A stretch of DNA of 64,000 nt. It comes from Octopus sinensis. Its lineage: Eukaryota. The notes beneath the pieces were generated by a model. The model worked only from the letters and a program-made list of their open reading frames with translations, searched no databases and was not told the DNA's origin. Below are positions 14,070-27,666 of this stretch, piece after piece; within the stretch, counting starts at the first letter, position 1; every line of letters begins with the position of its first letter. The DNA lies in NCBI RefSeq assembly GCF_006345805.1, contig NC_043010.1:54870001-54934000 (forward strand). The letters are read 5' to 3'. The position numbers and the translations under genes were made by a program.

Positions 14070-14406
14070 AAAAAATGTTTCAGCCCGAAAGTTGCGGCCA
14101 TGCTGGGGCACCACCGTTGAATGAGCTACACTAGTACGTGAAACCACATCTGATGCGTGGCACTTGTTCAACAAGGGAGTTCGACGCCGCTGCCCGCATC
14201 TGTGTTTCCTGCTGTGAGGTAGGTTCATCTGAGATCCCTGACAAGAAGAGATCCAGTTTAATTTTTAAGAAACCCACATCCACACCATGCAGGTCTTTGA
14301 GGCGTTTAGGAAGGAGATTGAAGAGCTGTGGTCCCATGAAACTGAAGCTGTTGCAGCATCTGGTCCTGTATTTTGATGGTGATGTCGGGATCTTTGGCAC
14401 CAGGAA
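14070..14406 (-). mobile_element. CR1/L2-group LINE, 5'-truncated 3' end
   Basis: ORF 14131-14400 reads ...CNSFSFMGPQLFNLLPKRLKDLHGVDVGFLKIKLDLFLSGISDEP, typical of the CR1-type ORF2 C-terminus. The 3' tail is GGTGGTGCCCCAGCATGGCCGCAACTTTCGGGCTGAAAC. Confidence 0.8.
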
Positions 14407-27109: not shown

Positions 27110-27634
27110 ACATAGACGGAGGCATACGTCTAATGCTTGGAGGAGGTAATAATACCCTGAGTCAAGAGGGTGACTGTTAGGAGACACTATATCTGACAAA
27201 AGGACTATGCACCATGCAACGTAAACAGCAGATCCCTGTCATGGCTGTCAGACAACTCATTTGAACACACTACCCCTAACATCTGGCTATTTAACTCTTC
27301 AGACTGCAACCTCCTTAAATATTATGTGTGAGGCACATTTGAGCGAGACACCAACAAAACTCCTTGTGGCACTAAAGATGAACTAAAGGTAAAGATTATG
27401 ACAGCATTCACCAGCTTGAGCAAGGACACCGTTCAGAAGAGTTGCAGGAGATTTTGAAGTCGTCTGGAAGGAGTGGCTGAAGTCAATGGCGATTTTATTG
27501 AATAAATTTACCCTTCAGAATTTATTTTTTGTTTTTGGCAGATGTTTCAGCTCATAGCTGCGGCCATGCTTATGCACCGCCGTTAGAAATATGGAACGCT
27601 TCACGAATTTAAGTGTGATCCATGCGCAGAGGCC

Positions 27635-27666
<32 letters not shown>

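What the first reader, a model, noticed from the sequence alone, without database searches (positions are those of the whole stretch)
27520..27666. U6 snRNA fused to a CR1-type LINE 3' tail (U6/LINE chimera) inside a mariner relic
Seen on the minus strand: U6 (about nt 25 to ...CCATATTT), then CTAAC, then GGCGGTGCATAAGCATGGCCGCAGCTATGAGCTGAAAC and an A-rich end. This tail matches the CR1-like LINE end at 14070-14120 (CAACGGTGGTGCCCCAGCATGGCCGCAACTTTCGGGCTGAAAC). The mariner 3' UTR resumes on both sides. U6 and the tail also share the 9-mer AGCATGGCC. Known: U6/L1 chimeras in mammals arise by template switching or by ligation of U6's cyclic-phosphate 3' end to L1 RNA. Inference: the same process with a non-L1 (CR1-group) machinery in a mollusc, or a member of a U6-headed SINE family.
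Basis: partly seen in the sequence, partly recalled or inferred. Interest (0 to 1): 0.7.

Follow-up and report, generated by a model that had tools for sequence, protein, structure and literature searches.

The report
U6 pseudogene fused to LINE tail
A 5'-truncated copy of the spliceosomal U6 RNA joined at its natural 3' end to the 43-base recognition tail of a local LINE/SINE family was pasted as one piece into an old DNA-transposon relic; this kind of chimera is already documented in vertebrates, so here it is a clean but ordinary example in an octopus-like genome.

Summary
Rfam finds U6 on the minus strand (84 bits). True U6 similarity is nt 26-105 (window 27587-27666, 75/80 identical to canonical U6). 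It abuts, with no poly(A) or repeat between, a 43-nt tail module (27544-27586). That module's core occurs 7 times in the window (0.1 expected), including a 5'-truncated LINE copy at 14077-14121 and several tRNA-type SINEs. The module folds into two hairpins; the second shows compensatory changes between subfamilies.

Seven related copies of the host Tc1/mariner-like transposon, one from Octopus vulgaris, were fetched. Six are collinear across the site without the insert, so U6 plus tail entered as one block. The seventh carries a different retroposon at the same nucleotide position.

Flanking duplication is at most 3-4 nt. The "A-rich end" may be target sequence rather than element.

The best explanation is a U6/LINE-tail chimeric retrocopy, made by template switching or RNA ligation and inserted by a tail-specific ("stringent") LINE. 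Doucet et al. 2015 describe the same pattern for L2 and RTE, and possibly CR1, in platypus, lizard and turkey. It is therefore a new member of a known kind.

"CR1-type" was not verified. A U6-headed SINE family could not be tested without the genome.

The parts
27587..27666 (-). U6 snRNA pseudogene, U6 nt 26-105. The 5' stem-loop is missing. There are 5 substitutions in the otherwise invariant ISL region. It ends ...CCATATTT.
   Evidence: Rfam U6 84.3 bits; 75/80 identity to canonical U6 and coordinates
27544..27586 (-). 43-nt LINE/SINE-type 3' tail module, CTAAC GGCGGTGC ATAA GCATGGCCGC A GCTATGAGCTG AAAC: two hairpins plus a GAAAC end. The last AAAC (27544-27547) is shared with the target and could belong to either.
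   Evidence: 81.8% to the LINE end at 14075-14118 and 90.6% to 56216-56247; fold; 92.9% of cells paired and 2 pairs with compensatory changes in helix 2
27539..27547 (+). Transposon sequence CAGATGTTT next to the insert. It matches CAAGATGTTT / CAAGATATTT of related copies and is the probable primer end of the nicked target strand (...GTTT^).
   Evidence: Junction comparison with L001-L005; L007 carries another retroposon after the same ...AAGATATTT^ with a 9-nt TSD
27524..27538 (.). 15-nt T-rich stretch (A-rich on the minus strand: CCAAAAACAAAAAAT), absent from all related transposon copies. It is either an unrelated indel of this copy or, together with 27539-27543, an A-rich 3' extension of the chimera.
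   Evidence: total extra length in the window is 134-135 nt, i.e. 119 + 15
27186..27505 (+). C-terminal relic of a Tc1/mariner-superfamily transposase (...VAEVNGDFIE, stop at 27503-27505; two internal stops)
   Evidence: Translation; homologs including an Octopus vulgaris protein; weak DDE_3 in relatives; 79.6% DNA identity to L002
27667..27786 (+). 3' untranslated part of the same transposon, resuming after the insert
   Evidence: BLAST collinearity with L001-L007
14077..14121 (-). Tail module of a 5'-truncated LINE copy (TCAACGGTGGTGCCCCAGCATGGCCGCAACTTTCGGGCTGAAAC)
14131..14400 (-). C-terminal 89 codons of that LINE's ORF2
   Evidence: ORF list; 306 relatives at E<=1e-3, including 870-1017 aa proteins matched at their C-termini; the six long ones scanned (918-1017 aa) all carry RVT_1 and Exo_endo_phos_2
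31727..31770 (+). Same tail module at the 3' end of a tRNA-type SINE (SINE-type hairpin 2, GTCAAATGAC)
56216..56242 (-). Tail copy whose hairpin 2 (GCTCTGAGC) is closest to that of the chimera; its 5' part is replaced by a (CA)n run

Best explanation
This is a chimeric retrocopy. A cDNA was started on the structured 3' tail of a tail-specific ('stringent') LINE RNA, or of its partner SINE RNA. It continued onto mature U6 snRNA, either because the reverse transcriptase switched template at the 5' edge of the tail module or because U6 had first been ligated to a tail fragment. The cDNA stopped or was joined at U6 nt ~26.

Shown here:
- The order and orientation are U6 then tail.
- The junction lies at the U6 oligo-U end.
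- The tail is the complete two-hairpin module shared by the local LINE and SINEs.
- The block is a single insertion relative to related transposon copies.

Inferred:
- Priming from the + strand nick ...CAGATGTTT^, whose GTTT pairs with the RNA's terminal AAAC.
- Joining of the 5' end at an AAA(A) microhomology, which would explain both the 5' truncation of U6 and the 3-4-nt duplication.
- The choice between template switch and ligation, which one copy cannot settle.

The copy is a dead pseudogene with no function of its own.
For: - U6 nt 26-105 directly abuts the tail module, with no poly(A), no repeat and no separate TSD.
- The tail core is 70-fold over-represented in the window and ends a LINE copy that has an ORF2 C-terminus just upstream.
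- The two hairpins are conserved and helix 2 has compensatory changes. This fits a protein-recognised 3' element.
- Six related transposon copies (L001-L006; L002 from Octopus vulgaris) are collinear across the site without the insert. The window has 134-135 extra nt there.
- L007 has a different retroposon inserted after the same ...AAGATATTT^.
- The LINE-derived part of the chimera starts within ~3 nt of the point where LINE and SINE tails begin to resemble each other.
- The published precedent has the same anatomy: 5'-truncated U6, a short L2 piece and TSDs of 1-9 bp (PMC4476161). The ligation route is described in PMC6789731.
Against: - Only one copy is available, so recurrence and junction variability are unknown.
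- There is no convincing TSD (3-4 nt at most).
- The 3' boundary is ambiguous. Reading A: a 119-nt insert plus an unexplained 15-nt indel 9 nt away. Reading B: a 143-nt insert with an A-rich end and a ~10-14-nt target deletion.
- The related transposon copies are only 72-80% identical, so the pre-insertion sequence is inferred, not seen.
- The donor (LINE or SINE RNA) and the LINE clade are unresolved.
Confidence: 0.78

Rival explanations
1. It is one member of a multi-copy U6-headed SINE family (SINEU-like). A single founding chimera was then copied many times through its tail.
For: SINEs with snRNA heads exist for U1/U2 (SINEU, PMC4494074). The tail here is the complete recognition module, so such an RNA would be mobilisable. 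The tail's hairpin-2 variant recurs at 56216-56242.
Against: - No second U6 in the 64-kb window or in 38 kb of related cephalopod-like loci.
- No U6-tail junction among the 120 best antisense-U6 ORFs in the protein collection, nor in JGI metagenomes. All of these are low-power tests.
- The head lacks the U6 5' end, and U6 uses an external promoter, so a master copy could not carry its own promoter.
- The 5' end sits in microhomology with the target, as expected for an individual truncation.
Confidence: 0.1
2. Two independent events happened to lie side by side: a 43-nt 5'-truncated tail insertion and a separate U6 retropseudogene.
For: Tail copies are dense (about 1 per 7-9 kb), and very short copies occur.
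Against: - The abutment is exact to the base at the natural U6 3' end, in the same orientation.
- U6 has no poly(A), tail or TSD of its own that would let a LINE enzyme insert it alone.
- There is no repeat around either half.
- With 7-9 tail copies in 64 kb, a start within a few bases of a given point in one orientation has a chance of roughly 5e-4.
Confidence: 0.06
3. It is an assembly artefact or a DNA-level rearrangement joining unrelated pieces.
For: The region is repeat-rich. The window's ORF abutting the junction was not found in any other assembly.
Against: Both junctions are clean and the flanks are collinear with six independent transposon copies. The architecture matches a known retroposition product.
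Confidence: 0.03

Closest known systems
U6-L2 and U6-Mon-1 chimeras of platypus; U6-L2 / RTE / AnolisSINE2 chimeras of Anolis; one U6-CR1-like case in turkey (Doucet et al. 2015, PMC4476161)
   Same: U6 lies upstream of a short 3' piece of a stringent non-L1 LINE or its SINE. U6 is mostly 5'-truncated. There is no poly(A) on U6. TSDs are very small (1-9 bp).
   Different: The host is an octopus-like mollusc, not a vertebrate. The LINE family and tail (two hairpins ending GAAAC) are different. Only one copy has been seen here.
U6/L1 chimeric retrogenes of mammals (Buzdin 2002; Moldovan et al. 2019, PMC6789731)
   Same: Same order (U6 5', LINE 3'), with the junction at the U6 3' oligo-U end. The same two candidate routes apply: template switch, or ligation of U6 to LINE RNA.
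   Different: In L1 chimeras U6 is usually full length, the L1 piece varies in length and ends in poly(A), and TSDs are long. Here U6 is truncated, the LINE piece is just the recognition module, and the TSD is 3-4 nt at most.
SINEU, SINEs with U1/U2 snRNA-derived heads (Kojima 2015, PMC4494074)
   Same: An snRNA-derived 5' part is joined to a retrotransposon-type 3' end. Template switching to an snRNA is proposed as the origin.
   Different: SINEU are proven multi-copy families with subfamilies, built on U1/U2. Here the snRNA is U6 and no second copy has been found.
Bi- and tripartite chimeric retrogenes of Magnaporthe grisea (PMC2104539)
   Same: Chimeric retrocopies attributed to template jumps during LINE reverse transcription, outside mammals.
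   Different: A fungal LINE with different partner RNAs.

Membership tests
U6/LINE chimeric retropseudogene | U6 sequence 5' of a LINE (or partner-SINE) 3'-terminal segment, on the same strand | tested here: met
   U6 nt 26-105 at 27587-27666 (-) and the tail at 27544-27586 (-)
U6/LINE chimeric retropseudogene | Junction at the mature U6 3' oligo-U end, with nothing between | tested here: met
   ...CCATATTT is followed directly by CTAACGG, which is homologous to the SINE CTAAAGG and the LINE TCAACGG
U6/LINE chimeric retropseudogene | The 3' part belongs to a LINE/SINE family resident in the same genome | tested here: met
   The core occurs 7 times in the window against 0.1 expected. A LINE copy with an ORF2 C-terminus lies at 14077-14400
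U6/LINE chimeric retropseudogene | The whole chimera inserted as one unit, flanked by one pair of TSDs | tested here: inconclusive
   One unit: yes, by empty-site comparison with six related transposon copies. TSD: only AAA(A/C), 3-4 nt, which is within the 1-9 bp reported for L2 chimeras but too short to prove
U6/LINE chimeric retropseudogene | Recurrent in the genome, with independent junctions | not testable with these tools
   No cephalopod genome can be searched by DNA. Proxy searches found none
snRNA-headed SINE (SINEU-like) | Many copies sharing the same head-tail junction and the same 5' end | tested here: inconclusive
   A single copy in 64 kb plus 38 kb of related loci. The proxy searches were negative but have low power
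CR1-clade LINE (donor of the tail) | RT phylogeny places ORF2 in the CR1 clade | not tested
   Only the domain content of relatives is known: Exo_endo_phos_2 plus RVT_1 in the six long relatives scanned, 918-1017 aa. No reference set for clade assignment was available
CR1-clade LINE (donor of the tail) | Structured 3' UTR recognised by its own RT, with a short-repeat 3' end rather than poly(A) | tested here: inconclusive
   Two conserved hairpins with covariation. SINE copies end in AGTAAAAG-like repeats. This fits the CR1/L2 group but is not specific to it
Functional U6 snRNA gene | Complete 5' stem-loop, intact ISL, and its own upstream promoter context | tested here: not met
   Nt 1-25 are absent and replaced by transposon sequence. 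There are 5 substitutions in nt 62-81
Tc1/mariner transposon (host relic) | DDE_3-type transposase | tested here: inconclusive
   The relic itself has no Pfam hit. The best relative scores 26.6 bits on DDE_3 against a cutoff of 28.6. Multi-copy collinear relatives exist in Octopus vulgaris and in ENA contigs

The most novel reading that the evidence does not exclude
The copy is the visible tip of a U6-headed SINE family in octopods. More modestly, this LINE's reverse transcriptase may leave its template preferentially at the 5' edge of the 43-nt tail module. The same jump would then create the genome's SINE tails and this U6 chimera, giving a natural snapshot of SINE birth.
Probability: 0.12. 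Interest if true: 0.55.

Novelty: new member of a known kind. Interest (0 to 1): 0.3.

Why it matters
It extends a documented by-product of LINE reverse transcription, U6/LINE-tail chimeras, from vertebrates to a mollusc and to another tail-specific LINE family. Two details bear on how SINEs acquire LINE tails: the LINE-derived part equals the minimal two-hairpin module, and its 5' edge coincides with the LINE/SINE homology boundary. As a single dead copy it has no functional consequence and does not change current understanding.

Tried and rejected
- TSD AAATTTA (27674-27680 / 27506-27512): rejected, because the bases between it and the insert (TTCTGAAGGGT) are transposon sequence in all relatives.
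- Single-gap excision scan: it gave only the total extra length (134-135 nt). Its optimum wrongly reuses U6 bases as transposon, so it cannot place the 3' boundary.
- MAFFT alignment of the whole region: the gap was misplaced, so I aligned by hand.
- Looking for more chimeras:
  - Two JGI metagenome scans for U6 3' end plus tail core gave 0 hits and then 14 chance bacterial hits, none U6-like.
  - A protein search with the antisense translation across the junction returned 418 antisense-U6 ORFs. None of the best 120 carries the tail peptide.
  - Rfam on the 7 related loci found no U6.
  - An exact look-up of the window ORF abutting the junction found nothing on record.
- Significance of the U6/tail 9-mer AGCATGGCC: about 2.5% of shuffles reach it, so I treat it as chance.
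- Literature search for U6 chimeras in molluscs: none found in the held library.

Full report
**1. What is there**

Read on the minus strand, the window runs as follows:
- transposon sequence ...GATATATTTGCCAAATTTACCTTT;
- then TAAAATTGGAACGATACAGAGAAGATTAGCATGGCCTCTGCGCATGGATCACACTTAAATTCGTGAAGCGTTCCATATTT;
- then CTAACGGCGGTGCATAAGCATGGCCGCAGCTATGAGCTGAAAC;
- then ATCTGCCAAAAACAAAAAATAAATTCTGAAGGGTAAATTTATTCAATAAAATCGCC.

Rfam calls U6 at its gathering threshold (27585-27689, 84.3 bits, E 5e-20). A local alignment to canonical U6 shows that real similarity covers U6 nt 26-105, which is window 27587-27666, with 75 of 80 bases identical. The five differences lie in the normally invariant internal stem-loop region. 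The 25 bases that Rfam forces onto the U6 5' stem-loop are transposon sequence, because related transposon copies without any U6 carry them. This is therefore a 5'-truncated, decayed U6 pseudogene.

**2. The tail**

The 43 nt after U6 (27544-27586) belong to a repeat that is very common here.
- Its core AGCATGGCCGCA occurs 7 times in the window with at most one mismatch. The expectation is 0.10, and no shuffle out of 100 reaches 7. A looser search adds two more copies in the window and one in an Octopus vulgaris locus.
- One copy (14077-14121, minus strand) ends a 5'-truncated LINE. The last 89 codons of its ORF2 lie just upstream (14131-14400).
- That C-terminus has 306 relatives in the 1.8-billion-protein library. 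Some are 870-1017 aa proteins matched at their very C-termini. The six long ones scanned (918-1017 aa) all carry RVT_1 and Exo_endo_phos_2.
- Other copies end tRNA-type SINEs, for example 31727-31770.
- The chimera's tail is 81.8% identical to the LINE end and 90.6% identical to the copy at 56216-56247.
- The module folds into two hairpins followed by GAAAC. Across seven copies, 92.9% of cells pair, against 19-42% when partners are slid. Two pairs of hairpin 2 change on both sides between the SINE type (CAGTCA..TGACTG) and the LINE/chimera type (CAGCT..AGCTG).

This is what one expects of the 3' element recognised by a tail-specific ("stringent") LINE enzyme.

Similarity between the LINE copy and the SINEs begins about 15-17 nt upstream of the core. 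That is within about 3 nt of the point where the chimera switches from U6 to tail. I have only one LINE copy, so I treat this coincidence as suggestive.

**3. One insertion into a transposon relic**

On the plus strand, 27200-27502 translates to the C-terminus of a transposase (...CRRF*SRLEGVAEVNGDFIE, stop at 27503-27505) with two internal stops.

Searches found 36 relatives, including a hypothetical protein of Octopus vulgaris. The best relative reaches only a sub-threshold DDE_3 match. "Tc1/mariner-like" is therefore reasonable, but "mariner" in the strict sense is not shown.

I fetched seven encoding loci.
- Six of the seven (L001-L006) align to the window up to 27495-27523 and again from 27670 or 27681. 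Identity is 72-80%.
- In L002, L003 and L004 exactly 14 nt (CAAGATRTTTKTMT) lie between the two aligned parts, where the window has 146. L001, L005 and L006 likewise have no insert there, only short stretches of their own sequence.
- The seventh copy, L007, is interrupted at this site by a different retroposon (section 4).

The window therefore carries 134-135 extra bases. U6 and tail together account for 119 of them. Neither half has a poly(A), a tail or a direct repeat of its own.

**4. Boundaries**

Two readings remain for the 3' boundary.

*Reading A, which I prefer.* The insert is 27548-27666.
- The plus-strand bases just before it, CAGATGTTT (27539-27547), match the relatives' CAAGATGTTT / CAAGATATTT.
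- The target was then nicked after ...GTTT, and those bases could pair with the RNA's terminal AAAC.
- The other junction falls in AAA(A), which U6 nt 27-30 share with the target. That leaves a duplication of 3-4 nt.
- In the relative L007, a different retroposon ending in (AAACC)n sits after the same ...AAGATATTT^, flanked by a 9-nt TSD. This position is therefore a demonstrated insertion site.
- The three LINE-type tails in the window share nothing beyond GAAAC(W)AT, whereas SINE-type copies share an AGTAAAAG-like extension.
- The cost of reading A is an unexplained 15-nt T-rich indel (27524-27538) only 9 nt away.

*Reading B.* The insert runs to 27524, with an A-rich 3' extension, and 10-14 nt of target were lost. 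The CAGAT match would then be chance, at roughly 1% by my estimate.

A closer transposon copy or the orthologous empty site would settle this. Under both readings the block is a single event with at most a very short TSD.

**5. Mechanism**

- Shown: the architecture, the junction position, the complete recognition module, and the single insertion.
- From established knowledge: stringent LINEs need their own 3' structure on the RNA they copy, so U6 can only be inserted if it is joined to such a tail (Doucet et al. 2015, PMC4476161).
- Inferred: either the reverse transcriptase copied the 43-nt module and then jumped to the 3' end of U6, or U6 was first ligated to a tail fragment, as RtcB does for U6 and L1 RNA (PMC6789731, abstract), and the chimeric RNA was then copied.

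A single copy cannot separate the two routes. The 5' truncation of U6 at a microhomology fits ordinary 5'-end joining.

**6. Comparison with what is known**

Doucet et al. report the following:
- In platypus, 40 U6 copies are joined to repeats (L2 or its SINE Mon-1). Almost all the U6-L2 chimeras have a 5'-truncated U6 upstream of a short L2 sequence. 72.5% of the 40 have TSDs of only 1-9 bp.
- In Anolis, there are U6 chimeras with L1, L2, RTE and AnolisSINE2.
- In turkey, there is one incompletely characterised 5'-truncated U6 next to a CR1-like element.

The present case matches that pattern point for point. SINEU (Kojima 2015) shows that snRNA-plus-tail chimeras can become SINE families, but those have U1/U2 heads and proven multiple copies. 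I found no report of U6 chimeras in molluscs in the held library. The taxon and the LINE family are therefore probably new, but the kind is not.

**7. Family or one-off**

This could not be tested properly, because no cephalopod genome is searchable by DNA with these tools. The proxy searches were all negative, and all have low power:
- no second U6 in the window or in 38 kb of related loci;
- no junction in JGI metagenomes;
- none of the best 120 of 418 antisense-U6 ORFs carries the tail peptide.

**8. Verdict**

The "CR1" label and the A-rich end are not verified. Novelty is modest: a new member of a known kind. Probabilities:

| Explanation | Probability |
|---|---|
| Single chimeric retrocopy | 0.78 |
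| Member of a U6-headed SINE family | 0.10 |
| Two adjacent independent insertions | 0.06 |
| Artefact or DNA-level rearrangement | 0.03 |

The host is inferred to be an octopus or close relative. The basis is the 80% identical transposon copy and the matching SINE tail in the O. vulgaris chromosome record OX597814.1.

Noticed in passing
window 29253-29361 (+), probably about 29235-29385: An isolated, diverged fragment of large-subunit rRNA (Rfam LSU, 70.8 bits, model positions 2593-2701) lies outside any rDNA unit. About 110 unrelated bases follow it, then an A-rich run, then a SINE starting near 29508. It carries no tail module, so it is not the same type of chimera. It could be a retrocopy or the flank of an rDNA-specific element.
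   Followed up: partly
L007 3290-3635 (ENA ERZ21867824 ctg120387l): In a related copy of the same transposon, a different retroposon ending in (AAACC)n on the minus strand sits at exactly the same position as the U6 chimera. It is flanked by a 9-nt TSD, AAGATATTT. That makes two hits at one site among eight copies examined, which suggests a preferred nick site.
   Followed up: partly
window 27524-27538: A 15-nt T-rich stretch (ATTTTTTGTTTTTGG) is absent from all related transposon copies and lies 9 nt from the chimera's 3' junction. Its origin is unexplained.
   Followed up: partly
window 27582-27586 compared with 14117-14121 and 31727-31731: The U6/tail junction coincides, within about 3 nt, with the 5' edge of the segment shared between the LINE copy and the SINEs. 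This hints at a preferred template-switch or cleavage point at the edge of the recognition module.
   Followed up: partly
window 28531-28919 (-): A tRNA-headed SINE of another family, without the AGCATGGCCGCA tail, is flanked by a perfect 13-bp TSD, CACTAAGGGTTAC (28518-28530 and 28920-28932). It shows that other retroposons here leave long TSDs, unlike the chimera.
   Followed up: no
window 27503-27515 and 27664-27676: An imperfect inverted repeat (TAAATTTACCCTT / AAAGGTAAATTTG) brackets the insertion site. A weaker version (AAATTTAC / GTAATTT) is present in relatives, so it belongs to the transposon 3' UTR and not to the insertion.
   Followed up: partly
proteins P0129 and P0137: Antisense-U6 ORFs from 28 ENA contigs share a fixed peptide (…RARAKMHAEKKMFKGVRK) right next to the U6 3' end. 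In some unidentified eukaryote, U6 is therefore repeatedly adjacent to one sequence, either as a tandem U6 gene repeat or as a U6-containing repeat family.
   Followed up: no
window 27631-27639 and 27562-27570: U6 and the tail share the 9-mer AGCATGGCC. About 2.5% of tail shuffles align to U6 as well, so this is probably coincidence.
   Followed up: yes
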